Both the position numbers and the translations under genes were made by a program. The notes beneath the pieces are model-generated. The model was given only the letters and a program-made list of their open reading frames with translations. It did not search any database and was not told where the DNA came from. Below, piece after piece: positions 2 through 35,704 of a stretch of 64,000 nucleotides of DNA (the stretch's first letter is position 1; the number at the start of each line of letters is the position of its first letter). The stretch spans positions 140,009 through 204,008 of IMG/VR virus record IMGVR_UViG_3300024336_000005. One strand, given 5' to 3'.

Positions 2-349
2 GCGCGCGAGGTCGATCTTCTCTTGCAGAGGATTGAACTAAAGCTCCACCCACGTAAGGTAAAGCTTATGCCATACTATCAGAGACAGATTGTCACTGGC
101 ATTGTGGTAAATAATGAAAAATTGACGCTACCTAGATGGTACAAAGAGGAACTCTTCCTTGCTACAAAGGGAGAGGATCCGTCTACCTTCGATGAACAAT
201 TCAGGGGTGTTCTTGAGTATGTTCGTTCGGTAGATTCACAATTCTATAAAAAAATGTGCAACCATATGATTGCACCAAAGGAGAATGAAGATGGCAACAC
301 TTCCAGAGTGGATCACAGAGGTCCGATTTTATGCAACGACTCCCAGTAG
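2..349 (+). CDS. Retron-type reverse transcriptase, C-terminal fragment (5' end outside window)
   Basis: Frame open from base 2. LKLHPRKVKLM...RQIVTGIVVN..KLTLPR matches RT domain 7 with the retron VTG signature and start of the thumb. The YADD motif is not in the window. Confidence 0.75.
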   Translation, partial: AREVDLLLQRIELKLHPRKVKLMPYYQRQIVTGIVVNNEKLTLPRWYKEELFLATKGEDPSTFDEQFRGVLEYVRSVDSQFYKKMCNHMIAPKENEDGNTSRVDHRGPILCNDSQ

Positions 350-650
350 TGACCGCGCCCCTCAGGCACGCGGTTCAGTAACATTTGCTGGTGCTGTTTA
401 CTCACAGTTCACAGTCTGGCAGTCAAACGATGGCGCCCTTCAGGTTGTACTGCCGAGAGTAAAGAACCCAAAGTATAATCCTGACGAAGCTCACTCGAAG
501 ACCAACAAGATGTACTTCGAAGAGGTTGGTTGTACCAGCGGAGAGAAGAGGGAAGAGCTTGGCAAGGCTATCATTGGAAGCCTTCTCGAAGAGAGGAAGG
601 CGACTCCAGTCAAGGAGAGCAACACAGGTTCGGACGGCATTCCGTTTTAA
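291..650 (+). CDS. SpoVG-like (PC4/whirly-fold) nucleic-acid-binding protein with SSB-like tail
   Basis: ITEVRF...ARGSVTF...FTV..SNDGALQVVLPR...REELGKAII follows the SpoVG pattern. Ends GSDGIPF. SD AAGGAG at 278-283 before ATG 291. Confidence 0.6.
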   Translation: MATLPEWITEVRFYATTPSSDRAPQARGSVTFAGAVYSQFTVWQSNDGALQVVLPRVKNPKYNPDEAHSKTNKMYFEEVGCTSGEKREELGKAIIGSLLEERKATPVKESNTGSDGIPF

Positions 651-963: not shown

Positions 964-1283
964 TGGGAGTCTTCAGCATGGCTCGCACTCAAGCCTTGGC
1001 AACTGCCTTCTCAAAGGCAATTGGAGAGACAGAAGGCTTGCATGATGTTGAGATTGCCTACGCCTTAGCAGCAACGATGCGTGGTCTTGGTGAAGTGCTA
1101 TACGATAAAGAAGACACCTCTAAGGAGGCTGTCCTCGAAGACTATGCAAGCTCACCAAGTTGGGCTGGAGCTTTAATGATACATGCAGATCAAATCCATG
1201 TAATCAGAGAGCTTTTCATTCGGACAAAAGAATCCAATATAGATGAAGGAGTTGAAACAGACTCCAAGGAGACAGACGAATAA
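963..1283 (+). CDS. Hypothetical protein
   Basis: ORF coupled to both neighbours (TGATG and TAATG overlaps). Confidence 0.7.
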   Translation: MGVFSMARTQALATAFSKAIGETEGLHDVEIAYALAATMRGLGEVLYDKEDTSKEAVLEDYASSPSWAGALMIHADQIHVIRELFIRTKESNIDEGVETDSKETDE

Positions 1284-1855
1284 TGGAGCAGGAACAGTTT
1301 GATACACTAGTTAGAGGGATCTCAGCGGTCCTTGATAATGTAAGGACCCCACAGTTTCGCCCTCCCTCAGTAAACTTCTTCATGCCTAATCGAGGCCAGC
1401 TGCAGTTTACAATCGCCGCTCCACGTTATCGTGAAGTTGAGCGAAAGAATCCTAAGGATGCTGGAGTTCGCTGGGCAGATAAGATGGGAGCGGTCTTCGT
1501 TGAGGCAGCTCCTGCCTTGCCGAACTCAGACAAGCTGGACTGGGACAATAAGAAGATGATCTTTGCCATGTCAGACAAGGACATCGGCCAGGTCCTTTGG
1601 GGCTTTGCTGCCAAGAAGGAAGACATCCGACTTGTTCACGCTCCTGATGAAAATGCAAAGCAAAACAATAAGACCTTCCGAATCCGAAAGGGAGATGACT
1701 TTAGAGGCGAGCCTCAGTGGATTCTATCTCTTACGGAAAAGAAGAATGGAGAGTCAAATGAAGTCTCTGTGTTCATCAAGGGACCGGATATGATGAGACT
1801 CAAGTCGCTGTTGGAGGGAGCAATTCCCTACATACTGGGCGCCCATCGAACTTAG
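1283..1855 (+). CDS. Whirly-family ssDNA-binding protein
   Basis: GAVFVEAAPA...DWDNKKMIFAMSDKDIG...LVHAP...IPYILG parallels plant Whirly G.VLLQFAPA...YDW.RKQVFSLSVTEIG...FFHDP...PYLLGW. Confidence 0.7.
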   Translation: MEQEQFDTLVRGISAVLDNVRTPQFRPPSVNFFMPNRGQLQFTIAAPRYREVERKNPKDAGVRWADKMGAVFVEAAPALPNSDKLDWDNKKMIFAMSDKDIGQVLWGFAAKKEDIRLVHAPDENAKQNNKTFRIRKGDDFRGEPQWILSLTEKKNGESNEVSVFIKGPDMMRLKSLLEGAIPYILGAHRT

Positions 1856-10382: not shown

Positions 10383-10670
10383 ATGGCAGTTTATACAGGA
10401 GAGGTTAGGGGAGACTTTGATTCAAGGGTTGACCTGGTCAAATGGGACAACTACGGACTTGAATTTAAGTTTGCTGCCTTGAATGATGAGGCTTATGTTA
10501 TCAAGCAAGATGCAAAGGGGAAATGGGTGGCAGGCGAGTGGGTGGTAACAGAGGATAAGCTAAGCCAGCTCTTGCGTTCTCTTATCAGAGGCATGGGCTT
10601 TGGTAGATTTAGGATGGGCAAGGGTAGGAACACCACATTCATAGGAATAGTAGAAGTAGAAAATGTCTAA
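10383..10670 (+). CDS. Hypothetical protein
   Basis: ORF between the DUF3310 gene and recA. Confidence 0.6.
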
Positions 10671-11286
10671 AGATGATGCCCTCGGGCTCTTGATTAAGTC
10701 TTGCGAAAAGCAATTTGGTGAAGGTGCGGTCTTTGACCTCTCCTCATCTACTGTGCCCAAGGTTCCTAAGGTAAGCTTTGGGTCTATTAAGATAGACATT
10801 GCTGCAGGTGGTGGTGCCGGGAAGGGTCGTATCATTGAGGTCTATGGTCCTGAAAGCTCAGGTAAGACGACCCTGTGTTTGAATCTCCTTAGAGAGATTC
10901 AAAATGATCCAGATTATGTTGCTGAAGGCAGACGACCTCTATTTATTGATGCAGAGCATGCCCTTGACCTAGAGTATGCTACTAATTGCATTGGAGTAGA
11001 CCCTAATAATTTGTTGGTGGCCCAGCCCGATGTTGGTGAAGATGCGCTAGAGATAGCTGACATCTTCATTAGGAGTGGGAAGGTCTCGGCGGTCTTTGTC
11101 GACTCTGTTTCAGCACTACTCCCCAGAGCAGAGCTTGAGGGAGAGATGGGCAAGTCTCATGTTGGACTGCTTGCTAGGCTTATGTCGCAGGCTCTGCGTA
11201 AGTTGGTAGGACTTTGCCATAAGACTGGTACGATTCTTGTCTTTACTAACCAAATTCGTATGAAGATTGGTGTGATGTTTGGAAAT
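10663..11286 (+). CDS. recA: RecA recombinase, exon 1
   Basis: [16 protein letters not shown] (Walker A), [40 protein letters not shown]. Confidence 0.95.
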
Positions 11287-12217
11287 CAACTTTTAGCTGC
11301 ATAAACTAAGACTACATCAGTTATTGATCCGCTTAGGAGGATCTGCTGATGATTATAAATGGTTATAAATTCAATAAAATTGATGAATCTCATGTTGAGT
11401 ACTTAAAGGCTCACTATCAGGATAAACTAACGGATCTTTGTGAGGGCCTTGGCCTTTCCGATGAAACAGTTTATCGAATGATAAAAGCACTGGGCATCCA
11501 GCGAGAGAGGCATTGGAAGAGATCTATACCTCGGAATAAAGAGGCAGAAGATCTAATGAGAGATCCATATCTCTCACATGTAAAAATTGCAAAGAAGTAC
11601 AATTGTACACCGGAAGCAGTTGCAAAGCGACGGACTGACCTTGGCGTTACAGTCAGAAGGAATATGTGTTCCACTCAGCTAGAAGATAGGATTCAACTTA
11701 TCCTAGAAGAGATTGGGCTAGCATATATCCCACAACGAAACCTAGACAAATGGTCAATAGACTTTTATCTGGGTTGCAATTTTTACATAGACGTTCATGG
11801 TTCATGGGCACATTCAAAACCTAAGATTGTCGAAAGAGACAAGCGCAAGGCAAAATGGATGGAAGACAAGGGATTTAAATACCTTGTCATTCGTGAATCG
11901 GATATTGAAGAAGCCAAAAATAAGATCTTAGATTTTGCATCTGGGTTTCCCTTAGCGGTAACGTTAAGTAAAAAACCTTGTGAACTGCTACCCGCAGGTG
12001 TCGCCTCTAGGCGGCTAACGGTGAAACCCTTCATAATGGGCAATACCGTGCCAAGCCTCATAAATGAGGAAGGTGTAGAGACTATCGAAAGCACATCGAA
12101 AGATGGGAGTGAGTAGAGTAGGGATAGAGATAGGTACTATCCCCAAGCGCAAGGCTCCTCGTTTGAGGATGATGATATAGTCCGAGCCATAGAGATGATA
12201 AATCTATGGGAGTCTCG
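11287..12217 (+). mobile_element. Group I intron in recA
   Basis: Removal restores GVMFGN|PETTSGGNALKF. Exon ends in U and intron ends in G. P1: GGAAAU pairs with GUUUCC (11945-50). P10: UCUGG (11940-44) pairs with exon 2 CCAGA. P3: CCUUGUG/CGCAAGG. P7: GACUA (12080-84)/UAGUC (12178-82). S element GAUAUAGUCC. Confidence 0.93.
11349..12116 (+). CDS. Intron-encoded homing endonuclease, Vsr-like/EDxHD (I-Bth0305I-like) with N-terminal HTH repeats
   Basis: SD AGGAGG; two HTH-like segments; IDFY...YIDVHGSWAH...ERDKRK...GFKYLVIRESDI. The 3' end runs into the ribozyme core. Confidence 0.8.
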   Translation: MIINGYKFNKIDESHVEYLKAHYQDKLTDLCEGLGLSDETVYRMIKALGIQRERHWKRSIPRNKEAEDLMRDPYLSHVKIAKKYNCTPEAVAKRRTDLGVTVRRNMCSTQLEDRIQLILEEIGLAYIPQRNLDKWSIDFYLGCNFYIDVHGSWAHSKPKIVERDKRKAKWMEDKGFKYLVIRESDIEEAKNKILDFASGFPLAVTLSKKPCELLPAGVASRRLTVKPFIMGNTVPSLINEEGVETIESTSKDGSE

Positions 12218-12817
12218 CCAGAGACGACTAGTGGAGGCAACGCTCTGAAGTTTGCTGCCTCTCAGAGGATTGACATTCGTCGCAAGACAAGTGCAGCAGA
12301 TACTGAGAAGGATGCAGATGGAAATGTATTCCGCATCCCGACGACGGTCAAGTTCGTAAAGAACAAGCTGTTTCCTCCCTTCCGAGTTGCTCACATTGAT
12401 ATGGAAATGAATGTTGGCATCAACAGAACAGCAGAAATCTTGGACCTTGCCGCTGACAACGACATAATTCTTAAGTCAGGGGCATGGTACGAATACGTTG
12501 ACCCCTCCCGAACGGAACTCTTGTTAAAGCTTCGTCAGCATGAGGATGTAAAGGCTTTGATCCAAGAGATTAAAGCCGCTCCAAAGGATTTTAATGTCGT
12601 TCCGGAAAGTATCAAGGAAGGAGCTCGAAAGATAGGTCCCCTTCTTGATGCCTTGGAGTTCGATGACAAGGGCTGGAGGGTTCAAGGGCGTTCTTCTGCT
12701 ATAGAGGCCCTAGGAGAGAGACCAGAGTTATTGGAGGAGCTTAGAGTTCACATTCGTGAAATCTATTTCCCAACCAGTAGCCCACAAGCGGAAGTTTCAG
12801 ACGATATTCCGTTTTAA
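12218..12817 (+). CDS. recA: RecA recombinase, exon 2
   Basis: PETTSGGNALKFAASQRIDIR, VKNKLFPPFR, KSGAWY. Spliced protein is 407 aa and ends SDDIPF. Confidence 0.93.
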   Translation, partial: PETTSGGNALKFAASQRIDIRRKTSAADTEKDADGNVFRIPTTVKFVKNKLFPPFRVAHIDMEMNVGINRTAEILDLAADNDIILKSGAWYEYVDPSRTELLLKLRQHEDVKALIQEIKAAPKDFNVVPESIKEGARKIGPLLDALEFDDKGWRVQGRSSAIEALGERPELLEELRVHIREIYFPTSSPQAEVSDDIPF

Positions 12818-14643: not shown

Positions 14644-14807
14644 CTGATCTCCCTCCAGCCTAGATCCTCTCCACCCACCTGTGGACCCGCCCGCAACCTC
14701 AAAGGCCAGCAGGGCCTTCAGTCCCAGTAAAGCTCTTCCAAATTGGGAAGATAATCATTACCACTCCTTTATTAGTTATGTTAAGCAATAACAGCAGGAG
14801 CTCCTCC

Positions 14808-15203
14808 ATGAGTAGATGTAACAAGTGTGATATGCCTATCAATGGCACAATGATGGATAGATGCTTCTGTGAGCCAGCTGTTGGTAAGTCTAGTATGGCC
14901 AAATATATGCCCACATGTGGGGCAGACTATGACGATGATCGTCGTGATATGGCTCCCATCTATACCATGCCTCCCGTGGTAAAGAACATAGACCCTCTTT
15001 GGGCTCACTTAGTGGTGAATGAGACCAACATAAGGTTTGAATACCTTTCTCCTAGTCGTGGGGCAACCACCAGGAGCGTTAAGCTTCTGGGATGTTATAA
15101 GAGCTTTGGTAATACATATATAATTGGCTACTGCATGCTAAGAGATGCAAAGAGGACCTTTAGGGTCGATAGAATTCAGAAGGTGGTGGCCGTTGACGCT
15201 TAA
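14808..15203 (+). CDS. WYL-domain protein with N-terminal Cys-rich module
   Basis: IRFEY.....TTRSV......YIIGYC.LRDAKRTFRVDRI is the WYL pattern. N-terminal CNKC...CFC. SD AGGAG at 14796. Confidence 0.8.
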   Translation: MSRCNKCDMPINGTMMDRCFCEPAVGKSSMAKYMPTCGADYDDDRRDMAPIYTMPPVVKNIDPLWAHLVVNETNIRFEYLSPSRGATTRSVKLLGCYKSFGNTYIIGYCMLRDAKRTFRVDRIQKVVAVDA

Positions 15204-16585: not shown

Positions 16586-16642
16586 GTGAAGCAATACAAA
16601 GAGTTAGTACAAGATGTACTAGAGAATGGAACCAAGAGATGA
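16586..16642 (+). pseudogene. Orphaned thyA N-terminal mini-ORF (18 aa)
   Basis: GTG start with SD GGAG. MKQYKELVQDVLENGTKR* matches the ThyA N-terminus. Its TGA overlaps the HNH ATG. Confidence 0.75.
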
Positions 16643-17130
16643 AGTGGATTCCTGGGTTCGAGGATCGTTATGCAGTTTCGGCTAATGGTGAGATCTGGTC
16701 ATATGTAGGACACATCCCTAGAAAATTAAAGCCAGATCTTGTTAAAGGATATCATCGAGTCACATTGTTTGATTCAAACAAGCGAACTCGTATGCCTGTC
16801 CATAGAATTGTCGCATTAACTTATATTTTGAATCCAGAAAACAGACCGCAAGTTAACCATATAGATGGCAACAAAATTAACAATGCTGCAATAAATTTAG
16901 AGTGGATGACATCTAAAGAAAACTGCGCTCATGCTTTGGAAGAGGGTCTTTATAAAACTGCTGTTGGCGAACAATATAATAGATCGGATCTAACTGACAT
17001 GGAAGTATTACAAATACGATCTGTGTGGGAAGAGAATGCTCACACTCAAAAAGAACTCGCTAACATGTTTTCTACAACTAGGTCAAATATAAATAATATT
17101 GTTAATAGATACACTTGGAAACATATATGA
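16639..17130 (+). CDS. Free-standing NUMOD4-HNH homing endonuclease
   Basis: WIPGFEDRYAVSANGEI (NUMOD4), VHRIVA...VNHIDGNKINN...NLEW.T..EN..HA, C-terminal HTH. AT-richer than flanks. Confidence 0.9.
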   Translation: MKWIPGFEDRYAVSANGEIWSYVGHIPRKLKPDLVKGYHRVTLFDSNKRTRMPVHRIVALTYILNPENRPQVNHIDGNKINNAAINLEWMTSKENCAHALEEGLYKTAVGEQYNRSDLTDMEVLQIRSVWEENAHTQKELANMFSTTRSNINNIVNRYTWKHI

Positions 17131-17948
17131 TTCAATATATAGAACTCCTTCAACAAGTTTTAAGCGAAGGAGAATACCATCAAGATCGTACTGGCACCGG
17201 CCGTTGCTCTATCTTTGGTGTCCAAAAGCGATATGATTTGAACAATGGAGCCACCTTTCCTCTGGTCACAATCCGCAAATCTTTCTTTGCTAGTGCGGTC
17301 AAAGAAATCCTTTGGATGCTTAGGGGTGAGCGCAATGTTAAAACTTTGGGAGCAGGGTTCTGGAACCCTTGGGCTCGAGAGGGTGGAGACATTGGGCCCT
17401 TGTATGGACATCAACTAAGACATTGGCCGGATGGGACTGAGGGTGGGAACGATCAAATTGCTAACGTTCTAGAGTCTCTGCGACAAAACCCCAAATCGCG
17501 CCGCCACATCATAACAACGTTCAATCCCCTTGACGCTCCTAAAGGCGTCCTCTATCCGTGTCATGGGATAGTCATACAATTCTATCCCAGTGCAGATGGG
17601 CAATTCCTGGATCTTCACATGGTGCAGCGATCACAAGATTTGATTCTTGGGTATCCTGTGAATGTTGCTGAGTATGCTCTGCTTCTTATGATTTTTGCTA
17701 ATCGACTAGGCAGAAAAGCCAGAACCCTAATTCACACTATTTCCGACTGTCATCTTTACTCAAATCACATCGAGGGTGTTAAAGAGATGCTCTCTAGAGA
17801 GCCGCTGAAGCTCCCTAGAGTGACGATAGCTGATAAGCCTATGCCTTACCCTGGTTGTGCCAGGGACGGCTCTGTATTGGAGCCTGAGGATGTACAACTG
17901 ATAGGATATGAACACCATGGAAGAATCAAGTTCCCCATTGCAGTCTGA
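17127..17948 (+). CDS. thyA: Thymidylate synthase
   Basis: DRTGTG, GPLYGHQLR, SRRH, PCH, QRSxD.LGYPVN (Asn, dUMP-type), DCHLYSNH. ATG overlaps the HNH stop. Confidence 0.95.
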   Translation: MIQYIELLQQVLSEGEYHQDRTGTGRCSIFGVQKRYDLNNGATFPLVTIRKSFFASAVKEILWMLRGERNVKTLGAGFWNPWAREGGDIGPLYGHQLRHWPDGTEGGNDQIANVLESLRQNPKSRRHIITTFNPLDAPKGVLYPCHGIVIQFYPSADGQFLDLHMVQRSQDLILGYPVNVAEYALLLMIFANRLGRKARTLIHTISDCHLYSNHIEGVKEMLSREPLKLPRVTIADKPMPYPGCARDGSVLEPEDVQLIGYEHHGRIKFPIAV

Positions 17949-19778: not shown

Positions 19779-20170
19779 AGAACAATACAAACTGCACCAT
19801 AGGCATCCTAGAAGAGGATCAAAGCGTTAGCGTTATCTATTGCCACTGGGATGGCTATCTTGATGCGAACGGTGAGCGTCTCTGGAGGTTCTACTATGAA
19901 GAAAGTCATATTAGAGACCTGCTTGAGGGAGGAGATATCACATCTCTTGGCGCTAGCCATAAGGTAAGCGTTTACTATCATAAGGACTTCCAAGAGCCAC
20001 TTAAGGTTGCTCGTGTTTATGATACTTCTCTTGAGATGGTTGAGGCTGAGGGACGTAGGTTTAATTATCTCTATTGCATTCGCTCTGGCGAATGGTTCTT
20101 TTCAATGTGGTCGTCTAATGAATGGAAGAATTTAAAAGATGCAAACTTCAAGACCTCTGGTCCATTATGA
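19775..20170 (+). CDS. Hypothetical phage protein
   Basis: IYCHWDGY...G..L motif typical of a common phage family. Confidence 0.65.
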   Translation: MKNNTNCTIGILEEDQSVSVIYCHWDGYLDANGERLWRFYYEESHIRDLLEGGDITSLGASHKVSVYYHKDFQEPLKVARVYDTSLEMVEAEGRRFNYLYCIRSGEWFFSMWSSNEWKNLKDANFKTSGPL

Positions 20171-20915
20171 TGGTCCCATTGAATGGATCAATGAAGGCCG
20201 TGTGATTCTGTATGGAATCCACGGGTCTCATCTTTATGGGACAAATATTGAGACCTCTGATGAGGACTATAAGGGTATTGTTGTCCCTCCTAGAGTGTAC
20301 CGCCAGGGCTTTTCTAAGACCTTTGAGCAGGTTATCCAAGAGGGATGTGAGCTTGAGTATGTCATTTATGATATCCGTAAGTTCTTTAAGCTTGGGGTTA
20401 AGTGTAACCCCAACATCTTAGAGCTTCTCTACTCTAAGTCCTTCTTGCACTCCACTGAGGGAGGAAGACTGCTGGCTGAGAACAGGGATGCGTTTCTTTC
20501 TCAGCGTGCAATCTCTTCATACAATGGATATGCTCTGTCTCAGTTGAAAAAGATGGAGACCTATAGGGCTGCCAATCCAGAGAGAGCTAGGTTGCGGGAG
20601 TTGTATGGATATGACACCAAGTTTGCCATGCATTTGATTCGACTGTTAAGGGTCTGCAACGAGATGTTGACAGAGGGAACCATTAACGTGTTCCGTAAGG
20701 ATGCAGAGCAGCTGATAGAGATCAGGAGGGGTGGATGGTCCTTGGCTCGTGTTCATAAGGTGGTCCAAGACCTTGAGGCCAGGAACTCTGCATTGGCGAC
20801 TACAACGTCTCTGCCTAAGGAGCCAGACATCGACTTCTTAGAGTCTTTGATGTCTGATATAATTGAGATTACGGAGTGCTCGGTTGCCTCCAAGGATGAG
20901 ATAAATGTTTTTTGA
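20139..20915 (+). CDS. Pol-beta superfamily nucleotidyltransferase (YcgL/RlaP-like)
   Basis: GSHLYG.NIETSDEDYKGI, NPNILELL, YDTKFAMHLIRLL, L..IRRG. Confidence 0.85.
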   Translation: MQTSRPLVHYDGPIEWINEGRVILYGIHGSHLYGTNIETSDEDYKGIVVPPRVYRQGFSKTFEQVIQEGCELEYVIYDIRKFFKLGVKCNPNILELLYSKSFLHSTEGGRLLAENRDAFLSQRAISSYNGYALSQLKKMETYRAANPERARLRELYGYDTKFAMHLIRLLRVCNEMLTEGTINVFRKDAEQLIEIRRGGWSLARVHKVVQDLEARNSALATTTSLPKEPDIDFLESLMSDIIEITECSVASKDEINVF

Positions 20916-23083: not shown

Positions 23084-24076
23084 ATGAAAGACTTTGTACA
23101 TCTTCACCTGCACACTAAGTTCAGCCTACAAGATGGTACCACTGAGCCTGAAGGGCTCATGAAAAAGTGTGCCGATCATGGGATGAAGTCCGTTGGAGTG
23201 ACAGATCATGGGAATATGGCAGGGATGTGGGATTGTGCTAAGTACGCTAAGCAGTATGGCATTAATCTAATCCCTGGCAATGAATTCTATGTTGTTCCTG
23301 ATGCACAAAAGAGCAGGGGGAATGATTGGCGGAAGGGGAAGTCCTCTCATCTTGGACTTCTTGCTTATAGTCAGACCGGTTGGGATAATCTGTTGAGGCT
23401 TACTGCGTTATCGAATCTTGAGGGATTCTATAACGAACCTCGGATAGACTATAGGATGCTCAGAGAGAACTCCGAAGGATTGTGGTGTATGTCTGGCTGC
23501 CTCGGCGGCTTCATAAATACAGCCATTAAGAATAATCAATCCCCAAGGTTTGCGGTAGATATGCTGCATAGTATCTTTGGAGATAGGCTATCTCTTGAGA
23601 TACAGGTGAACCCAATACCTGACCAGCAGATTCTTAATGATGAAGTGATAGCAATTCATCATGCTACAAAGATTCCCCTCGTTGCTACCGTTGATGCTCA
23701 CTACTTAGATAAGACTGATAGCCACAACCAGGACATCCTGTTTGCAATGCAGTTAGGGAAATCCCTAGAGGACCCAGAGAGGCTGAAGATGCCTCCAGAA
23801 GAGCACTCTGTTGAAACCCCAGAGGAAGCCATCAAGAGGTTCACAGATAAGTATGGGAACCTTGGATTGGAGGCTTGTCGGAGGACGGTAGAGATTGGAG
23901 ACAACTCTCACTCAGAGATTACTTACCAAAGTAAGAGCTATAAAATTCCCACCCTTGATGTTGCAGCACAGCCAGACTTCCAAGAGTTTCTTAAATGGAA
24001 GACAGGCTGTGAATGTCACACCTCAGACAAAGGGGAGTGCTTAGTACATGGAAAAGCCTGTGGGCATAACCACTAG
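23084..24076 (+). CDS. dnaE: Stand-alone PHP domain of DNA polymerase III alpha
   Basis: FVHLHLHTKFSLQDG, TDHGNM, GNEFY, HLGLLA, GFY..PRID, SGCLGG, LVATVDAHY. Ends at the PHP-palm linker with a Cys/His tail. Confidence 0.9.
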   Translation: MKDFVHLHLHTKFSLQDGTTEPEGLMKKCADHGMKSVGVTDHGNMAGMWDCAKYAKQYGINLIPGNEFYVVPDAQKSRGNDWRKGKSSHLGLLAYSQTGWDNLLRLTALSNLEGFYNEPRIDYRMLRENSEGLWCMSGCLGGFINTAIKNNQSPRFAVDMLHSIFGDRLSLEIQVNPIPDQQILNDEVIAIHHATKIPLVATVDAHYLDKTDSHNQDILFAMQLGKSLEDPERLKMPPEEHSVETPEEAIKRFTDKYGNLGLEACRRTVEIGDNSHSEITYQSKSYKIPTLDVAAQPDFQEFLKWKTGCECHTSDKGECLVHGKACGHNH

Positions 24077-24099
24077 AAATAAAACTATAGGAGATTAGC

Positions 24100-24393
24100 A
24101 TGTTAGAAGTTACCCCCGCACCTGGATTCGCCATGGTGACACTTGAGAAGGACGCACAGACAAAGTCTGGACTTTTTGTTGCAGGCACACAGGACGGCCT
24201 AAAGAGAGGTCGCGTAGAAGGCCTTGGCCCTGAGTTTGTCACAGACCATGGTGTTTCAATCGCCTTCCCAGCAGATGTTGGAGATGTCGTTCTATTTGAC
24301 AAGGGAACTGAATTTTCAATCCCGGGGCAAGGAAGCTACTACTTCGTGTGGCGGAACAACACTGTTGGCAGGATCGTCGAGTCAGGAGAGTGA
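24100..24393 (+). CDS. groES: GroES-like co-chaperonin
   Basis: TKSGLFV, GRVEGLGP, VGDVVLFDK. Confidence 0.75.
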   Translation: MLEVTPAPGFAMVTLEKDAQTKSGLFVAGTQDGLKRGRVEGLGPEFVTDHGVSIAFPADVGDVVLFDKGTEFSIPGQGSYYFVWRNNTVGRIVESGE

Positions 24394-24719
24394 CAGATTC
24401 ACTTGGGAATGAATACAGAGTGGGAGATATACTCTTGTACGTCGCCGGGGGAGATCAGGCTCGGCCACAGATTGCCATGTTTGTTGAAGCTTATATGAAT
24501 GCAGATGGAGATCCTAAAAATAGGTTCCTTTTTGCGAACCGTAGAACGTGGAATCGAGATCAAAATAACGTGTCTGTCAGAACTATTGGACGGCCCTGGA
24601 GGGCCCGCTTGAAGCGGCTCTCTGATGTCCTTCCTCATGACAAGGCCCTCGAGGCAAGAGATTTCTTTGAGTATGCCCTGGAGCTAAAGGGATACGAGCT
24701 TGGGCTGCCTCTTCTTTGA
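24390..24719 (+). CDS. Hypothetical protein
   Basis: GTGA overlap with groES; TDSLGNEYRVGDIL motif. Confidence 0.6.
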   Translation: MTDSLGNEYRVGDILLYVAGGDQARPQIAMFVEAYMNADGDPKNRFLFANRRTWNRDQNNVSVRTIGRPWRARLKRLSDVLPHDKALEARDFFEYALELKGYELGLPLL

Positions 24720-24766
24720 GGTATGATGTCAGAATGGAGAGGTCTCAGAGAGAAGGAGAGGTTCAA

Positions 24767-25592
24767 ATGAAGAGTGATGATCAGAACTCCTACCTTTTAT
24801 TTTGGGCCCAGAAGGGGCTTAAGGCAAGAGGGCTCTGGGATGACCAGGTCTATAAGGATAGGGTAGATTACGAGTGGAAAGTTATCTCTCGTATGGGGTT
24901 TGCAGGATACTATCTTGTAGTCGCTGACTACGTGGCTTGGGCCCGTAGTCAAAGAATCCCAGTGGGGCCTGGACGTGGTTCAGGTGCTGGCTCTTTGATT
25001 GCCTATGCTGTAGGCATAACGGATGTGGATCCCATTAAGTGGGGCCTAATGTTTGAGAGGTTCTTGAACCCAGGTAGAGTCTCCATGCCTGACTTTGACA
25101 TTGACTTTGGAAAGAGAGATCGACTCAAGGTTTTTGACTACCTGTCAGAGAAATACGGACATCAGAACGTTTGTCAGATTGGTACTATTGGCACCATGAA
25201 GGCAAAGCTTGCGGTCAAAGATGTGGGGAGAACCCTTGGACTTGATCCCTCTGAGCTGGAAAGATTCTCTAGCTTAATTCCCGACGAAGAAAGAGGAGGA
25301 CAGGGCGATCATGCTATCACCTTGAGCCTCCTCTTGGATCCTCCCAGGGAGCTTGTTAAGGCTCACGGAGAGGCTCTTGCAAAGTTCAGAACTGCTTATG
25401 AATTCGACAAAGACTTTCATAGAGTTGTCAACCTTGCTGTAGAGCTGGAAGGAATCCCAAAGAGTTACGGGGTGCACGCAGCTGGAGTTGTCATCGGAAT
25501 TGATTCTCTATGGGGAGATATTCCTCTTAGGAAATCAAATGATGGAAGGCCTGTTAGTCAGTGGACTGACAAGCAGGTCGAAAAGATGGGGT
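24767..25592 (+). CDS. dnaE: DNA polymerase III alpha catalytic core, exon 1
   Basis: SD AGGAGAGG; GFAGYYLVV.D, GPGRGSGAGSL, FERFLNP.RVSMPDFDIDF, HAAGVVI. Confidence 0.93.
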
Positions 25593-25734
25593 TAGCTTAT
25601 TAGCCCCTGTATGGAGCAATCCGTACAGCAAACAAGGTGAACCCCAAAGCAAAGGGGGTGTGCTGCATCTGCAGCGCTAACAGGGGAACCTAAGTGAGCG
25701 AGTCTCATAAGGCAATCCTGTGCTAAGCTTTTGA

Positions 25735-25763
25735 TTGATTAGGTATTGCAAAATTGATATAAT
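25735..25763 (+). promoter_or_regulatory. Sigma70-type promoter for the intron HNH gene
   Basis: TTGATT-17 bp-TATAAT with extended -10 TG. Confidence 0.6.
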
Positions 25764-25790
25764 AGGAGCTCAACAAACAGGAGCTGCGTT

Positions 25791-26327
25791 ATGCAAAAGT
25801 TAGAAGGATTTGAGAAGGTAGAATCTGAAGGAATTTTGGGAGAGTATTATATTCATCCAGACGGAAGGATCTACAGAGATTACGGACATAGAATAAAATT
25901 TCTTTCCGAGAGGCCAAATGCTTATGGCTATAGTCGAATAAGCTTGCTTCATCAGGATGGACGTAGAGTGGATCGAATGATGCATCGATTATTGATGTTA
26001 ACATTTGTCCCAAATCCAGATAATAAGCCACAAGTCAATCATAAAGACGGAGATAAAAGCAACAATCAGCTTTCCAATTTGGAATGGGTTACAGATCGAG
26101 AAAATAAGCTTCATTCACATAGAGTGCTTGGAGCCAAATCTAGTGACAAAAGTTGTTTCTTATTTTATTTTGGGGGCTTTGTTCAAAGGTTTCCAAACAT
26201 CCAAGCTGCTTGTAACTATGCAGCTAAAAAATATGGGTGCTCCTCAAAGTCTTTATGTAAATATTACACATCTAATGGATGTGCAATTATTACAGAAGAA
26301 AGTGCAACGACTATCCTAACGGAGTAG
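25791..26327 (+). CDS. Intron-encoded HNH homing endonuclease (I-HmuI-like)
   Basis: HRLLM.TFVPNPDNKPQVNHKDGDKSNNQLSNLEWVT..EN..H; located in the P6 region of the intron. Confidence 0.9.
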   Translation: MQKLEGFEKVESEGILGEYYIHPDGRIYRDYGHRIKFLSERPNAYGYSRISLLHQDGRRVDRMMHRLLMLTFVPNPDNKPQVNHKDGDKSNNQLSNLEWVTDRENKLHSHRVLGAKSSDKSCFLFYFGGFVQRFPNIQAACNYAAKKYGCSSKSLCKYYTSNGCAIITEESATTILTE

Positions 26328-26420
26328 GGGGGGTATTGCTCCTCTCGAAGCGCCTTGATCTCTGAATCAATACAGAGAATATGATATAGTCTGTGCCACT
26401 AGAAATAGTGGAATAACACG

Positions 26421-28141
26421 TTGTAAAGTTCGACTTTCTGGGACTCCGCACACTTGATGTAATTGAAGACGCCTGTCGTAGCATAGAGAAAAGAACTGGA
26501 GTGACTATTGATTGGGAACAGACTCCCGAGGATGATGGTCCTACATTCGATATGCTCAGCAGAGGAGACACCTTTGGTGTCTTCCAGCTGGAGGCATCTG
26601 GTATCTCTGGGTTTACCAAGGGATATAAGCCAAGGTCTATCGATGACATCTCAATCATCTCAGCTCTATACAGACCTGGTCCGCTGGATAATGGGATGGT
26701 AGATGCCATTCTGTCTGTCCGCAAGGGGAAGAAGATTGAAGAGAGTCCTGTTGATGTCATTAAAGAAATCCTTAAGGATACGAATGGGGTTCTGACATAT
26801 CAGGAACAAGTATTAGCAATATCAAGGGAGATGGCTGGGTTTACCCTGTCGGGTGCTGATCTATTGAGGCGCGCGATTGGCAAGAAGCTGCCCGAAGAGA
26901 TGCAAGCGCAGGAGCAAAACTTTGTTGATGGCTCCGTAGAGAAGGGGTATCCAAAGCATCAAGCTTTGGAAGTATTTGAAATCATTAAGAAATTCGCTGA
27001 CTATTGTTTGTCATATGATACTAAGGTATTGACCGATAAGGGGCCTCTCTCAATTGGTCATATTGTAGAAAATCAGCTAGAGGTTTCTGTTTATTCTATT
27101 GATGAGCATGGGCTTGTCTACTCTCAGCCGGTGGCTCAGTGGCATGACAGGGGCATAAGAGAAGTCTTTGAATACAAGCTTGAGGATGGCTCTGTCATCC
27201 GAGCGACCGAAGATCATAAGTTTATGACCGTCGATGGAGATATGCTTGCTATTGAAACAATCTTCCTGCAGAATAGGGATATGCTTGTCATTGAAACAGG
27301 CAAGATTCAAATAGGGGAGATTGAAATGAAGCCTTATAATAAACTAAATGACCTGGACAAACAACTTGTCCAACGACTGTACTATGAAGGATTATCCTTT
27401 GAGGACATCTCAAAGGAAGCTGTGGTATCTCAACGTTCTGTTAGTCGTGTTTTGCAAGAGGCTAATATTAACACCAGAAGGAAAAACCGTTATACCCTTA
27501 ATGAAAGCTTCTTCTGTGGAGCATATGATCATTATGAATGTGCATATTTTTTAGGCCTACTGGCAGCAGATGGATGCGTTACTCATAAGGATTACATCGC
27601 CCTCCAGCTTATTGATGAAGAACTTGTCTTATGGTTTCGCAAAGCGATCGAATACTCAGGAGAAGTTCGGCTTATCCTTGGCGAGGAGCGAAAGCCCCCT
27701 GGCCAAGATGCCTATAGGGTGAACTTTAGCTCTGCCATAATGTCAGAGGAACTTCGTTCATATGGAATCATTGCCGGAAGACATCTTCAAGCAATTCCGA
27801 AGTTAGAAGATTCAATTGTGCCTCATTTTATTCGAGGGTATTTTGATGGAGATGGATGTGTTTACTTAAGGCCAGAGGGTTCTGGTGGAGTTGTTCATAT
27901 TGTAGCCTCCGAGGCGTTTTGCGAATCGCTTAAAGAATACTTTGGATTCGGAACAATTAGTTCACATCCCAGTGGTATGTATTATTGGAGGATCTTTGCA
28001 AAAAAACATGTGAATGTTTTTTATGAAGCCCTATATGATTCTGATGGTTCAGAGACCCTGTGCCTTAATCGCAAAAAGCAACTAATGGAAGCCTTCCTAC
28101 GGAGCTACAAGTATGAAAATTGTTGGAAAGCAAAGGATTGA
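26421..28141 (+). CDS. dnaE: DnaE exon 2 + N-intein + in-frame LAGLIDADG endonuclease
   Basis: KFDFLG, GVFQLE, ALYRPGP, YQEQV, ADLLRRAIGKK, FADY then CLSYDT (intein start 27005). The frame ends at stop 28141. Confidence 0.92.
27005..27300 (+). mobile_element. Split intein N-half, Npu/Ssp DnaE-type
   Basis: CLSYDTKVLT...QPVAQWHDRG..EVFEY.LEDGS.IRATEDHKFMTVDG.ML.I..IF (blocks A and B). Confidence 0.92.
27326..28141 (+). CDS. LAGLIDADG homing endonuclease with N-terminal HTH (own SD/ATG, in frame with IntN)
   Basis: SD AGGGGAG at 27313-19; YFLGLLAADGCV and FIRGYFDGDGCV; LNRKK. Confidence 0.85.
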   Translation: MKPYNKLNDLDKQLVQRLYYEGLSFEDISKEAVVSQRSVSRVLQEANINTRRKNRYTLNESFFCGAYDHYECAYFLGLLAADGCVTHKDYIALQLIDEELVLWFRKAIEYSGEVRLILGEERKPPGQDAYRVNFSSAIMSEELRSYGIIAGRHLQAIPKLEDSIVPHFIRGYFDGDGCVYLRPEGSGGVVHIVASEAFCESLKEYFGFGTISSHPSGMYYWRIFAKKHVNVFYEALYDSDGSETLCLNRKKQLMEAFLRSYKYENCWKAKD

Positions 28142-30993: not shown

Positions 30994-33585
30994 ATGGATA
31001 CAAATTCTGTGGCAACTGCGCTCGAGCAGGTCAGACCCTTCTTGTTTGACTATCTCGTAGCGGAAGGTGTGATCACTACTGACAACCCAGCTCGTAATGA
31101 TCAGTTCATCTGTCCTAATCCCAACCATGAGGACACAGCTCCGTCTGCGAAAATCCTTAGAGGAGGAGTAAAGGCATTTTGTCATGGATGTAAGACTACC
31201 TTTGATTTGCTTCATGTAAATCATTGGATTAAGTCTGCTCCTATCTCTGGGTTCGGCTTCATCACAAACAACCTCATGCCATTGTGCGAGAGGTTTAAGG
31301 TTGATTTTGAACTTGGAGATTTGTCTGAAGAAGATAGGTTTAAGCTAGATTCCTTTCGTGTGATTCGCATGGCCTCTGATTATATGTCCGCTCAATTGTG
31401 GTCAGAAGAATTAAGAGACTATGTGGAAGCAAGAGGTGTTGACGTTGTGTCGGCGCAGGAGATGGGAATCAGTGTAATTCCGAACTACTCGAAGTTCTTT
31501 TCTCACCTTAGAACAGCCTTCTCAAACGTCTTCCTTAGGGAAGTTGGTTTGGCAAAGGAAGGGATGTTCTCCTCAAGCTCAATTATCTTTACGATTAAGG
31601 ATCATAACGGTACTCCCGTTGGATTCATAAGTAGAGACATGGAGCACGAGGCAAAGAAGGAGAGATGGAGAGCCGAGGGTAGCCGAGGGGCTCCTCCTCG
31701 TAAGTACGACTCGTCTCCCGAGAAGAATCGTATCTACTTCAAGAGGTCAGTTCTCTTTGGTTTCTCAGACGCTGTATCTAATGATTACAAGGACTTATAT
31801 GGCTTCGAAGGTCAGTTTGACTGGGCCATCGCTAAGAAGAATGGACTGGACAATAGCATTGCCCTTAGTGGTAGTTCTATAACACCAGACCAGATTTCAC
31901 TTCTCCGTAAGTATGGCATCGAGTCTTTGACTCTTGTTATGGATGGAGATAGCGCGGGGGAGGAAGCGCTGGAGAAGCTGCTGCTTGGGGATTCAAAAGA
32001 TCCAGGCATGCTTGCTTCTGCTTCCTTCTTGAACGTCTACGTAATCACAATACCTTCTGGGTATGACCCCAATTCCTATATCGTTGAAAACGGAATGGAA
32101 GCCTTTAAGGGATTGGAAAGAGTTAGCTCTTTCCAATGGGCCTTAAATAGGCAGGACCCTTCCGTTGATCCACTTAAGGCTTGTGAAGCAGTGCTTCCAT
32201 TCATCCTGGCGGAGGACAACTTCCTTCGCAGGGAGAGAATGGTTGACGGTCTATCAGAAGCAACCGGTCTCTCTACAGTTGCCATCAATGATGAGTTGCA
32301 CAGAAGAGAAGATGCTAATAAGCAGGTTGCAGAAAGAGAGATGCGTAACATTGCGGATGAAGCCTTAAGAGAGTTTCGATATGGAGATGGGGCGGGCACC
32401 CAGATTTTGAGGAATGCCTTAGACCGCATTGAAGCCATTGACAGCGTAACGGTTGATACGCTTAGTAGCGAAGAGACCATTGCAGCTCTTGATGCGCAGA
32501 TTCAAAAAGAGTTTGAACTTGAGGGGCCTCAAGGTCACAACTACGGGAAGTTAACTCACTTCACAGCAGACCTTAATGGTGAGTCCCAAGGTGTTGTCAT
32601 CGCAGTTGGAGGCGTGCCTAATACGGGCAAGACCGCCCTTCAGTCCCAGTTCACCAAGGAGCTTCTGGATAACAATCCGAATCTCATTATCATAGCCCAG
32701 ACCATTGATGACACCCGTGCCCAATTCAACAGAAGGATGGCAATTCAATGGGCTCAGGAGATGGCGACTGAACAGGGGCTTAAGCTTGCTGATGCCATCA
32801 CACTGAATAAGATTGCTAGTCCTAAGTACTGGCTAAATGAATACCCTCGTGAGAATGAGGGACTTATGGAGTGTCGAGAGGAAGGGTATAAGAGGTTGAG
32901 GGAGTATCTTAAGGATGGGCGTTTGCACATCAAGGATACCACTCATGGGGCCACCCTGGTGATGCTCGAGAAGCTTGTGAAGAAGGTCTACAAGGACCAT
33001 CCAGGTGCTGAGGTGGTTGTTATATTGGATAACTTCCATAAGGCACAGGACTTCTCAAATCTAGATGAGCGTTCAGCTGTGAAGAAGAAGTCCGCGTTCC
33101 TTAAGAGAAACATTGCACAGGCATATAACTGTAGTGCCATCTCTACATTTGAATACAAGAAGGTCGAGACTGGGAAGCGTCCGGTGAACAACGACCTTCG
33201 CGATGCCGTTAACATTGAGTACGATATCAACTACCTAATAAACCTGTTCAGCCCATTGAAGGCTGCCCAGGATACAGGAGAGGAAGAGGCGTGCGAAATG
33301 TGGCATGGAGATGAGTTCAACAAGTTGCCTATCATTGAGGGAGATGTGGGGAAGAATAAGATTACTGACCTTAAGGGGCGCAGGTTCTTTGGCTTCTATC
33401 CGGCTCAATCAAGGTATGAATGCTATGCTTCTACCGATGTCTCTGCCATTGTTGCAAACAATAGGGGCAGCAAAGCCATTGAAGCTGGGCATGAAGGCAC
33501 CTGGAAGAACGGTAGGTACTTCCCAGCTGACGTAGATGTAGGTAAGACTCGACTGGTAAAGGCTAAGACTGAGGTGCCCTTCTAA
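30994..33585 (+). CDS. Fused DnaG-type primase / DnaB-like helicase
   Basis: Zn finger CPNPNH..D..PS...CHGC; TOPRIM FEGQFD, DGDSAG, DPN; Walker A GVPNTGKT; ILDNFH; ends VPF. Confidence 0.9.
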   Translation: MDTNSVATALEQVRPFLFDYLVAEGVITTDNPARNDQFICPNPNHEDTAPSAKILRGGVKAFCHGCKTTFDLLHVNHWIKSAPISGFGFITNNLMPLCERFKVDFELGDLSEEDRFKLDSFRVIRMASDYMSAQLWSEELRDYVEARGVDVVSAQEMGISVIPNYSKFFSHLRTAFSNVFLREVGLAKEGMFSSSSIIFTIKDHNGTPVGFISRDMEHEAKKERWRAEGSRGAPPRKYDSSPEKNRIYFKRSVLFGFSDAVSNDYKDLYGFEGQFDWAIAKKNGLDNSIALSGSSITPDQISLLRKYGIESLTLVMDGDSAGEEALEKLLLGDSKDPGMLASASFLNVYVITIPSGYDPNSYIVENGMEAFKGLERVSSFQWALNRQDPSVDPLKACEAVLPFILAEDNFLRRERMVDGLSEATGLSTVAINDELHRREDANKQVAEREMRNIADEALREFRYGDGAGTQILRNALDRIEAIDSVTVDTLSSEETIAALDAQIQKEFELEGPQGHNYGKLTHFTADLNGESQGVVIAVGGVPNTGKTALQSQFTKELLDNNPNLIIIAQTIDDTRAQFNRRMAIQWAQEMATEQGLKLADAITLNKIASPKYWLNEYPRENEGLMECREEGYKRLREYLKDGRLHIKDTTHGATLVMLEKLVKKVYKDHPGAEVVVILDNFHKAQDFSNLDERSAVKKKSAFLKRNIAQAYNCSAISTFEYKKVETGKRPVNNDLRDAVNIEYDINYLINLFSPLKAAQDTGEEEACEMWHGDEFNKLPIIEGDVGKNKITDLKGRRFFGFYPAQSRYECYASTDVSAIVANNRGSKAIEAGHEGTWKNGRYFPADVDVGKTRLVKAKTEVPF

Positions 33586-34971: not shown

Positions 34972-35189
34972 TGATATATCAATTTGAGTGTGCAGTTTGC
35001 GAGAAGCCTCGTGAATTTAATATGGAGATGAAGGATGCTCCTAGAGTAGGAACTTCTAGTGGGCTCTCTCGTGAGGTTACCCCTGAGCAAGACTTTCTGT
35101 GCGCTTGTGGCGCAAACAATTGGACTCGTGTCTGGCCCTCCAAGAATGGTGGCTTCCGCTGGAATATGAGAAGGACCTCTATAGTTTGA
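34971..35189 (+). CDS. FmdB-like zinc-ribbon protein
   Basis: MIYQFECAVC...CACG....RV. Confidence 0.6.
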   Translation: MIYQFECAVCEKPREFNMEMKDAPRVGTSSGLSREVTPEQDFLCACGANNWTRVWPSKNGGFRWNMRRTSIV

Positions 35190-35704
35190 TGGAAGCTCTT
35201 ATTATTCTAGGAGTCATTGTTGGAACAATCTTTTTCTCTTGGCTTTTCCTTAAGCCCAAGGATGATAAGGAGGGTGGCTTAGAGCTTGCTCAAGACCTTG
35301 AGCCCGTGCTCGCTGCTCTCCGCACGGTGTACCAGAAAGTAGCAGAAGACACAGCGTCTGTTACTGGACGCCTGACCACCCTAGAAGCGACTGTAAAGGC
35401 TACCCCTGGTAAGACCCTACAAACCATTCAGGGAAGCGTTAACAACACCACTGGGAAGCTTGGAGAGATGATACAGCTCCTTGAGCTGCAAGCCACCTAT
35501 GATAGGCTTATGGTCATCGGAGATATTGTAGACTTCATTGGGATTAAGTTTGCCACTGAGACTGAGCCTGCGCATATCGACTTCATCGATATTAAGACTG
35601 GAAAGAAGGCTGCTCTTAGCTCTGACCAGAGGAAGCTTAGGGATCTTATCAAAAACAATCCTGCTTGCATTACATTCAAGACGGTGAAAGTACAAATTAC
35701 ATGA
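35189..35704 (+). CDS. Membrane-anchored PD-(D/E)XK nuclease related to archaeal Holliday junction resolvase
   Basis: N-terminal TM; GKLGE, GDIVDFI, FIDIKTG...LS.DQR..RD.I. Confidence 0.7.
   Translation: MEALIILGVIVGTIFFSWLFLKPKDDKEGGLELAQDLEPVLAALRTVYQKVAEDTASVTGRLTTLEATVKATPGKTLQTIQGSVNNTTGKLGEMIQLLELQATYDRLMVIGDIVDFIGIKFATETEPAHIDFIDIKTGKKAALSSDQRKLRDLIKNNPACITFKTVKVQIT

What the first reader, a model, noticed from the sequence alone, without database searches (positions are those of the whole stretch)
12495..12817. RecA with an approximately 55-aa C-terminal-domain insertion and a DDIPF SSB-like tail
Seen: between GAWYEY and QG, where bacterial RecA has about 6 residues, there is a long helical insert (VDPSRTELLLK...DDKGWRV). 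The protein ends EVSDDIPF, essentially the E. coli SSB C-terminal motif. The primase-helicase ends TEVPF and the SpoVG-like protein ends DGIPF. Inference: the phage may put SSB-Ct-like docking tails on several replisome and recombination proteins, to recruit host SSB-interacting enzymes or a shared phage hub.
Basis: partly seen in the sequence, partly recalled or inferred. Interest (0 to 1): 0.6.

Follow-up and report, generated by a model that had tools for sequence, protein, structure and literature searches.

The report
Phage RecA with SSB-like tail
A marine jumbo-phage recA gene, itself split by a mobile self-splicing intron, encodes a RecA with a rare 57-residue helical insert and a tail ending in the same DDIPF tip that bacterial SSB uses to recruit repair enzymes. 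Three other proteins of this phage end the same way, so the tails look like real docking motifs, but binding is untested.

Summary
The stretch 12495-12817 is the end of exon 2 of a phage recA. Between GAWYEY and QGR lie 62 residues where E. coli RecA has 6. The protein ends SDDIPF.

Exon 1 is 10663-11286. A 931-nt group I intron (11287-12217) carries an I-Bth0305I-type homing endonuclease. A seawater metatranscriptome holds the circular intron RNA.

The insert models as three helices. Among 1.84 billion representative proteins it recurs only in one 402-aa, intron-less phage RecA, and that RecA does not end in IPF.

In the complete 204-kb genome exactly four ORFs end in [IV]PF:
- RecA
- the primase-helicase
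- a SpoVG-fold protein
- a Cys-rich orphan

About 0.07 are expected by chance (P about 7e-7). All three known SpoVG-like homologues keep a terminal IPF after a variable linker. No canonical SSB or beta clamp was detected in the phage.

Best reading: these are SSB-Ct-type docking tips. This is well supported for the SpoVG-like protein, plausible for RecA and weak for the helicase, whose tail is basic. No binding evidence was obtained. I rate it a new variant of a known kind, of moderate interest.

The parts
10663..11286 (+). recA exon 1 (208 aa; Walker A/B, L1, first half of L2; ends ...GVMFGN)
   Evidence: Pfam RecA, 247 bits, profile 3-198. The boundary is set by the intron-less orthologue P0124 / L085, which reads ...tttggcaat|ccagaa..., and by a U before the splice site.
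11287..12217 (+). Mobile group I intron (931 nt) in the L2-loop codons of recA
   Evidence: Rfam Intron_gpI, 30.7 bits, E=1e-5, at 11939-12209, below the gathering score. A 137-nt stretch of the core is 84.6% identical to the annotated recA intron of Bacillus phage 0305phi8-36. It ends in G. RNA run X12 holds a 956-nt contig joining 12217 back to 11292, that is a 926-nt circle plus a 30-nt overlap. The joint is absent from DNA runs X1 and X10.
11349..12116 (+). Homing endonuclease ORF, I-Bth0305I-type (EDxHD / Vsr-like nuclease with HTH N-terminal region); its 3' end overlaps the ribozyme core
   Evidence: BLASTP to 0305phi8-36 gp29, E=3e-23. PDB 3R3P, E=3.6e-12. PMC3239194. Residues D138, D148, H155 and D164 align with that enzyme's catalytic positions. 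An AGGAGG lies upstream.
11945..11950 (+). Internal guide sequence GUUUCC, pairing with the exon-1 end GGAAAU (P1)
   Evidence: Compensatory change against 0305phi8-36: GGUGAU pairs with GUCACC there. The pairing is read from the sequences.
12218..12817 (+). recA exon 2 (199 aa plus stop; PETTSGGN...SDDIPF)
   Evidence: The exact exon-2 ORF is on record on 10 contigs.
12497..12682 (+). 62-residue segment (net +56 aa) replacing the beta-hairpin turn of the RecA C-terminal domain
   Evidence: Gap in the alignments to PDB RecAs and to 32 bacterial RecAs. It is homologous only to P0124. AF2 models three helices at residues 96-106, 109-120 and 130-144, with block pLDDT 71-79.
12776..12814 (+). Disordered C-terminal tail of RecA; the tip DDIPF is 12800-12814
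   Evidence: pLDDT is below 50 for residues 187-199. Sequence. Identical to the last 5 residues of E. coli SSB.
291..650 (+). SpoVG-fold protein (119 aa) with a linker and the tip DGIPF (633-647)
   Evidence: Atlas feature score 0.94 and TM 0.66 to SpoVG clusters. The three family members end DGIPF, DVIPF and EPIPF. Pfam and PHROGs find nothing.
30994..33585 (+). DnaG-type primase / DnaB-type helicase fusion (863 aa) ending TEVPF (33568-33582)
   Evidence: Pfam Toprim_2, DNAG_N and DnaB_C. Sequence. The tail is basic and absent from relatives at 27-32% identity.
1283..1855 (+). Whirly-like protein, a candidate ssDNA-binding protein of the phage. It has no acidic tail.
   Evidence: Pfam Whirly, 30.2 bits against a cut-off of 23. 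It is conserved in the same gene order in relative L085.

Best explanation
Window 12495-12817 is the 3' end of exon 2 of a phage recA gene. The gene is interrupted in its L2-loop codons by an active, endonuclease-carrying group I intron. After splicing it should give a bacterial-type RecA of about 407 aa with two additions.

(1) A three-helix module of about 57 aa replaces the turn of the C-terminal-domain beta-hairpin. From the solved RecA structures (my knowledge, not tested here) that hairpin should lie on the outside of the filament, next to the surface that captures duplex DNA.

(2) A disordered acidic tail ends in SDDIPF, the tip of bacterial SSB.

I think the tip, with the IPF/VPF ends of the SpoVG-fold protein, a Cys-rich orphan and perhaps the primase-helicase, is most likely an SSB-Ct-type docking peptide. 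The terminal Pro-Phe, its carboxylate and the neighbouring acidic residues would plug into the hydrophobic, basic-rimmed pockets that SSB-interacting proteins use. Host RecO, RecJ, ExoI, PriA and RecQ-type enzymes are the most likely receptors.

No canonical SSB was detected in the phage. It may therefore have moved the SSB hub function onto its own recombinase and onto an unconventional nucleic-acid-binding protein. That would give these proteins access to the host SSB interactome, or let them compete for it. On RecA the same acidic tail probably also acts as the usual autoregulatory flap.

Shown: the sequence features, the enrichment, the conservation of the SpoVG-like tip, the predicted disorder of the tails, the failure to detect a canonical SSB, and the activity of the intron.
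Inferred: any binding, the identity of the receptors, and the role of the insert.
For: - Insert and tail are verified.
- Four [IV]PF ends against 0.066 expected, P about 7e-7.
- IPF is invariant in 3 of 3 SpoVG-like homologues despite 36-39% identity and variable low-complexity linkers.
- The tails are predicted disordered, as is the linker and tip of SSB.
- In SSB the last Pro-Phe sits in a hydrophobic pocket of RecO, and more than 17 partners use the tip (PMC7913777).
- No PF00436, gp32 or gp2.5-type SSB and no beta clamp turned up in the complete genome.
- None of 174 other RecAs ends in PF, so the RecA tip is not a family habit.
- Precedent: a non-canonical phage SSB-like protein carries a conserved DDIPF tip (bioRxiv 10.64898/2026.10.27.754916).
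Against: - The only orthologous RecA with the insert ends DFDDSVKE, so the RecA tip is not conserved.
- The helicase tail is basic, and its only relatives found, which are distant, lack it.
- Some ordinary RecAs already end in acidic residues plus Phe: 7 of 99 here.
- The host and the receptors are unknown.
- Only two or three relatives exist, so conservation statistics are thin.
- The AF2 monomer model shows no docking of the tail.
Confidence: 0.45

Rival explanations
1. The RecA tail is only the ordinary acidic autoregulatory C-terminal flap of RecA. The IPF ending is drift with no docking role. Only the SpoVG-like protein carries a functional tip.
For: - E. coli RecA has an acidic, disordered regulatory tail whose deletion (deltaC17) changes dsDNA binding and Mg dependence (PMC6547424).
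- 7 of 99 bacterial RecAs here end in acidic residues plus Phe.
- Orthologue P0124 has an acidic tail without IPF.
Against: - None of 174 RecAs ends in PF.
- The five-residue identity to the SSB tip occurs in a genome where three other proteins carry the same rare ending.
Confidence: 0.3
2. The tails dock on a phage-encoded hub rather than on host proteins. This would resemble T7, where the acidic, Phe-terminated tail of the SSB gp2.5 binds the phage DNA polymerase. From my own knowledge, not checked here, the T7 helicase-primase gp4 tail does the same. Candidate hubs are the fragmented DnaE polymerase, the Whirly-like protein, and the DHH or SbcD-like nucleases.
For: - For T7, the acidic tail and terminal Phe of gp2.5 interact with the polymerase (PMC12339929 and its references 41 and 42).
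- Here both the helicase-primase and an ssDNA-binding-like protein carry the ending.
- The phage encodes its own DnaE, clamp-loader-like AAA protein and nucleases.
Against: - The tips copy the bacterial SSB consensus exactly, which a private phage interface would not need.
- No receptor was identified.
Confidence: 0.2
3. The insert is not protein. It would be a second small intron, an intein remnant or mis-assembled DNA read through in frame.
For: A 62-codon open frame could arise by chance about 5% of the time (my estimate).
Against: - No Rfam match lies there at the gathering threshold.
- There are no intein-type ends.
- A homologous in-frame segment with conserved residues (DP.RT, R.IGP, L.F.D.GW) is present in the independently assembled P0124.
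- AF2 models three helices.
- DNA contigs from several seawater runs carry it unchanged.
Confidence: 0.02

Closest known systems
Bacterial SSB C-terminal acidic tip (E. coli MDFDDDIPF) and its network of SSB-interacting proteins
   Same: Position at the extreme C-terminus. An [I/V]-P-F ending preceded by acidic residues. It sits at the end of a disordered segment. The RecA tip is identical over the last 5 residues.
   Different: It is attached to RecA, a SpoVG-fold protein, a primase-helicase and an orphan, not to an OB-fold SSB. Binding is untested. The helicase tail is basic.
T7 gp2.5 (and, from memory, gp4) acidic tails with a terminal Phe that bind the T7 DNA polymerase
   Same: Several replisome proteins of one phage share a Phe-terminated tail, which implies one shared receptor.
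   Different: The T7 tails are not IPF-type. The proteins here include a recombinase. The receptor is unknown.
E. coli RecA C-terminal autoregulatory flap (deltaC17)
   Same: A disordered, acidic tail after the C-terminal domain.
   Different: This one ends in the SSB tip IPF, which none of 174 compared RecAs does.
Bacillus phage 0305phi8-36 RecA (ORF241) with its mobile intron and I-Bth0305I
   Same: The same intron insertion site, a homologous ribozyme core (84.6% identity over 137 nt) and a homologous EDxHD endonuclease. It also has extra residues, about 27, at the same C-terminal-domain hairpin.
   Different: Its insert is shorter and not clearly homologous. Its tail is long and lysine-rich, without IPF.
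Phage SSB-like protein 0087 of Bas phages, which has a conserved DDIPF tip
   Same: A non-canonical phage ssDNA-binding protein carrying the bacterial SSB tip.
   Different: 0087 still contains an OB fold. Here the tip sits on a SpoVG fold and on enzymes.
SpoVG (PF04026) nucleic-acid-binding proteins
   Same: Predicted fold and language-model features. Strands followed by a helix in the AF2 model.
   Different: No Pfam match even at E<=5. It has an added low-complexity linker and an IPF tip.

Membership tests
Bacterial-type RecA (PF00154 plus RecA_C PF21096) | The ATPase core matches the family profile above its cut-off | tested here: met
   Exon 1 scores 247 bits and exon 2 scores 53.7 bits, against a cut-off of 27. 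PDB RecAs match at E down to 1e-21. GPESSGKT and the L2 motif GN|PETTSGGNALKF are read from the sequence.
Bacterial-type RecA (PF00154 plus RecA_C PF21096) | Contiguous C-terminal domain | tested here: inconclusive
   RecA_C matches only profile positions 2-24 of 57. The remainder is found after the 62-residue insert. The domain is present but interrupted.
Bacterial-type RecA (PF00154 plus RecA_C PF21096) | Uninterrupted reading frame | tested here: not met
   The gene is split by a 931-nt group I intron. An intact protein requires splicing. No exon-exon junction read was seen, as RNA coverage was low.
SSB-Ct acidic tip (docking motif) | Extreme C-terminal [I/L]-P-F preceded by acidic residues | tested here: met
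   RecA has SDDIPF (net -3 over its last 12 residues). The orphan has EGPIPF (-3). The SpoVG-like protein has SDGIPF (-1). The feature is not met by the helicase, KTEVPF (+2).
SSB-Ct acidic tip (docking motif) | Tip at the end of an intrinsically disordered linker | tested here: met
   pLDDT is below 50 for RecA residues 187-199 and for SpoVG-like residues 104-119. This is a prediction only.
SSB-Ct acidic tip (docking motif) | Carried by an OB-fold ssDNA-binding protein | tested here: not met
   The carriers are RecA, a SpoVG-fold protein, a primase-helicase and an orphan. No PF00436, PF08804 or PF10991 match exists in the genome.
SSB-Ct acidic tip (docking motif) | Conserved among orthologues | tested here: inconclusive
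   SpoVG-like protein: 3 of 3. RecA: 0 of 1. Helicase: 0 of 3 distinct distant relatives. Orphan: no relatives found.
SSB-Ct acidic tip (docking motif) | Binds the pockets of SSB-interacting proteins | not testable with these tools
   The host and the receptors are unknown. This needs peptide-binding assays.
Group I intron with an EDxHD (I-Bth0305I-type) homing endonuclease | Group I catalytic core | tested here: inconclusive
   Rfam gives 30.7 bits against a gathering score of 50 (E=1e-5). However, the core is 84.6% identical over 137 nt to an annotated recA intron. Folding gives z = -4.1.
Group I intron with an EDxHD (I-Bth0305I-type) homing endonuclease | U before the 5' splice site, terminal G, and P1 pairing with a guide sequence | tested here: met
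   Exon 1 ends in U at 11286 and the intron ends in G at 12217. GGAAAU pairs with GUUUCC, with compensatory changes against 0305phi8-36.
Group I intron with an EDxHD (I-Bth0305I-type) homing endonuclease | Ribozyme activity in nature | tested here: met
   A circular intron RNA (11292-12217, with G12217 joined 5 nt inside the 5' end) is present in a metatranscriptome contig and absent from the DNA runs.
Group I intron with an EDxHD (I-Bth0305I-type) homing endonuclease | Vsr-like nuclease domain with the catalytic residues | tested here: met
   PDB 3R3P, E=3.6e-12. The aligned positions D138, D148 (Glu in I-Bth0305I), H155 and D164 are conserved (PMC3239194).
SpoVG (PF04026) | Match to the family profile | tested here: not met
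   No Pfam hit at E<=5 and no PHROG hit.
SpoVG (PF04026) | SpoVG fold | tested here: inconclusive
   Atlas feature score 0.94 with 221 shared features. TM 0.66 to SpoVG clusters. My own AF2 model is of low confidence, pLDDT 51.

The most novel reading that the evidence does not exclude
The phage has done without an OB-fold SSB and has spread the SSB hub function over several proteins. A SpoVG-fold protein built like SSB (fold, low-complexity linker, IPF tip) would coat or mark nucleic acid. The recombinase, the primase-helicase and an orphan would carry the same tip. All of them would then plug directly into, or compete for, the host's SSB-interactome pockets. RecA would thereby recruit itself without a mediator.
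Probability: 0.22. Interest if true: 0.75.

Novelty: new variant of a known kind. Interest (0 to 1): 0.5.

Why it matters
SSB-Ct tips are the universal address label of bacterial genome maintenance. Finding that label on a recombinase would be new. So would finding it on a SpoVG-fold protein in a phage in which no canonical SSB was detected. It would show a new way in which phages rewire or hijack the host SSB interactome, and it would give SpoVG-like phage proteins a testable role. The insert marks the RecA C-terminal-domain hairpin as an evolvable site. The intron adds a natural, expressed member of the I-Bth0305I family.

Tried and rejected
- One complex prediction was run: the RecA C-terminal domain with its insert and without its tail, against the SpoVG-like protein. 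It gave no support (score 0.00). This is no evidence either way.
- Pfam and PHROGs gave nothing for the SpoVG-like protein, the orphan or the insert.
- AF2 of the SpoVG-like protein from 3 sequences was of low confidence.
- tblastn of the SpoVG-like protein against 50,697 phage records found no match.
- IMG/VR scans for the SpoVG-like protein and the orphan found only the same phage.
- The Atlas found nothing for the orphan.
- The metagenome scan for the helicase found only relatives at 27-30% identity, and they lack the tail.
- Foldseek of the exon-2 model returned only RecAs, so the insert's fold could not be searched on its own.
- A beta-clamp-binding motif was considered and rejected. The tails lack the Q-L-x-L-F pattern (my knowledge) and the phage has no clamp.
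- An intein or second intron as the origin of the insert was rejected; see the rival explanations.
- No exon-exon junction was seen in the RNA contigs, where exon depth was at most 5.
- The spliced RecA was deliberately not joined. The exons were searched apart by reference, and the natural intron-less orthologue P0124 served as the full-length view.

Full report
CONTEXT. The window is positions 296-64295 of a 143-kb IMG/VR virus record. A 204,008-bp record rated 100% complete carries the same phage in circular permutation. Near-identical DNA occurs in many seawater metagenomes. The plus-strand half of the window is a replication, recombination and nucleotide-metabolism module. It holds a class II RNR, recA, phoH, dUTPase, thyA, DHFR, a fragmented dnaE, an SbcD-like nuclease, a primase-helicase, two resolvases and a clamp-loader-like AAA protein.

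THE GENE IS SPLIT. RecA is encoded by two ORFs in different frames, 10663-11304 and 12206-12817.
- The natural intron-less orthologue P0124 reads ...IGVMFGNPETTSGGNALKF.... Its DNA reads ...ggcaat|ccagaa.... This fixes exon 1 at 10663-11286 and exon 2 at 12218-12817.
- The 931 nt between them are a group I intron. Rfam Intron_gpI gives E=1e-5, below the gathering score.
- A 137-nt stretch of the core is 84.6% identical to the annotated mobile intron in recA of Bacillus phage 0305phi8-36.
- A U precedes the 5' splice site and the intron ends in G.
- The exon end GGAAAU pairs with GUUUCC at 11945-11950. In 0305phi8-36 the pair is GGUGAU with GUCACC, a compensatory change.
- The intron ORF (11349-12116) is a homologue of I-Bth0305I, the EDxHD / Vsr-like homing endonuclease.
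- A seawater metatranscriptome holds a 956-nt contig in which 12217 is joined back to 11292. That is a 926-nt circle plus a 30-nt assembly overlap. The DNA runs lack this joint. It is what cyclisation of an excised group I intron by its terminal G, 5 nt inside its 5' end, would give.
They were searched apart by reference, and P0124 served as the full-length view.

THE INSERT.
- Pfam RecA_C stops at profile position 24.
- phmmer against solved RecAs aligns exon-2 residues 1-94 and resumes at residue 156.
- Alignments with 32 bacterial RecAs show 62 residues where they have about 6.
- AF2 (34 sequences, mean pLDDT 72) models the segment as three helices that leave and re-enter the C-terminal-domain beta-hairpin.
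- An exhaustive HMMER search with the C-terminal domain plus insert over 1.84 billion representatives found four proteins at E<=0.001. They are the protein itself, P0124, a 2,417-aa protein (P0125, five matched stretches) that I did not retrieve, and a 100-aa RecA C-terminal fragment with no insert.
- P0124 is 402 aa and 45% identical over exon 2, with a homologous insert. It lies on a syntenic 25.5-kb phage contig.
- The word search found no other carrier among proteins of 112-355 aa. The nearest cellular RecAs that carry a name are from Saprospiraceae.
- 0305phi8-36 RecA has a shorter addition of about 27 aa at the same hairpin. The site therefore tolerates insertions in phage RecAs.
- From my knowledge of the RecA structures, this hairpin borders the duplex-DNA gateway surface of the C-terminal domain. 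That was not tested here.

THE TAILS.
- RecA ends SDDIPF, the E. coli SSB tip. The last 13 residues are predicted disordered.
- In the assembled 204-kb genome exactly four ORFs of at least 50 aa end in [IVL]PF. They are RecA, the primase-helicase (TEVPF), the small protein at 291-650 (DGIPF) and a Cys-rich orphan outside the window (G000 124067-124951, GPIPF).
- Shuffling the C-terminal 20 residues gives 0.066 expected, and no shuffle in 20,000 reached 3.
- None of 99 bacterial RecAs, and none of the 75 phage RecAs whose gene end was captured, ends in PF. Seven bacterial ones end in acidic residues plus Phe.
- The small protein has only two homologues in 5.8 billion proteins. All three end in IPF after linkers of different length and composition.
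- The ESM Atlas places the small protein with SpoVG by features (0.94) and by structure (TM 0.66).
- Against the idea, P0124 ends DFDDSVKE. The helicase tail is basic and is missing from the only relatives found, at 27-32% identity.
- The complete genome gives no match to the OB-fold SSB, gp32, gp2.5-type SSB or beta-clamp profiles. It does encode a Whirly-like protein.

INTERPRETATION. The tips most likely act as SSB-Ct-type docking peptides. The case is strongest for the SpoVG-fold protein, which copies the SSB plan of fold, linker and tip. It is plausible for RecA and the orphan, and weak for the helicase. Whether the receptors are host SSB-interacting proteins or a phage hub, as in T7, is open. 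I favour the host because the tips copy the bacterial consensus. On RecA the tail may also be the usual autoregulatory flap. A phage SSB-like protein with a DDIPF tip has been described. I found no report of such a tip on a RecA or on a SpoVG-like protein.

Noticed in passing
window 11287-12217: recA is interrupted by a 931-nt group I intron carrying an I-Bth0305I-type (EDxHD) homing endonuclease. The circular intron RNA (926 nt) is assembled in a seawater metatranscriptome, at higher depth than the exons.
   Followed up: yes
window 23084-29351: The dnaE (Pol III alpha) gene is in pieces. PHP domain: 23084-24076. Palm: 24716-25603. A second group-I-intron-like stretch: Rfam 27.6 bits at 26063-26412, plus a partial hit at 25680-25774, with an HNH_3 endonuclease ORF at 25791-26327. 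Fingers fused to a LAGLIDADG intein: 26501-28141. HhH plus OB: 28113-29351.
   Followed up: partly
window 24100-24393: A GroES/Cpn10-like ORF (Pfam E=1e-5) lies between the PHP and palm pieces of dnaE.
   Followed up: no
window 1283-1855: A Whirly-like protein (PF08536) lies in a conserved four-gene cluster with the SpoVG-like gene. The complete genome gives no match to the three SSB families tested, so this may be the phage's ssDNA-binding protein.
   Followed up: partly
G000:C1:124067-124951 (outside the window; L083 4068-4952): A fourth protein ends in IPF (EGPIPF). It is a Cys-rich orphan with no relatives or family hits.
   Followed up: partly
window 16639-17130: An HNH_3/NUMOD4 endonuclease ORF ends inside the start of thyA (17115-17948). 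It looks like a free-standing homing endonuclease.
   Followed up: no
window 35099-35704 and 37550-38050: Two different Holliday-junction resolvase-like genes are present, one archaeal Hjc-like and one RusA-like. An RlaP-like nucleotidyltransferase (20139-20915) and a WYL-domain protein (14778-15203) are also present.
   Followed up: no
L085 1002-4185: The related phage contig carries JAB-like, ThiF and reverse-transcriptase (RVT_1) genes upstream of the SpoVG-like / Whirly cluster.
   Followed up: no
G000 versus G001: The 143-kb record is a part of the 204-kb record in circular permutation. G001 78,987-139,713 is missing from G000.
   Followed up: yes
window 11240-11287: Many contigs from other organisms in the seawater runs match this 40-48-nt recA stretch and then continue as intron-less recA. 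Hafnia phage yong2 recA is 100% identical over 41 nt here. This is the conserved L2-loop target that the homing endonuclease exploits.
   Followed up: partly
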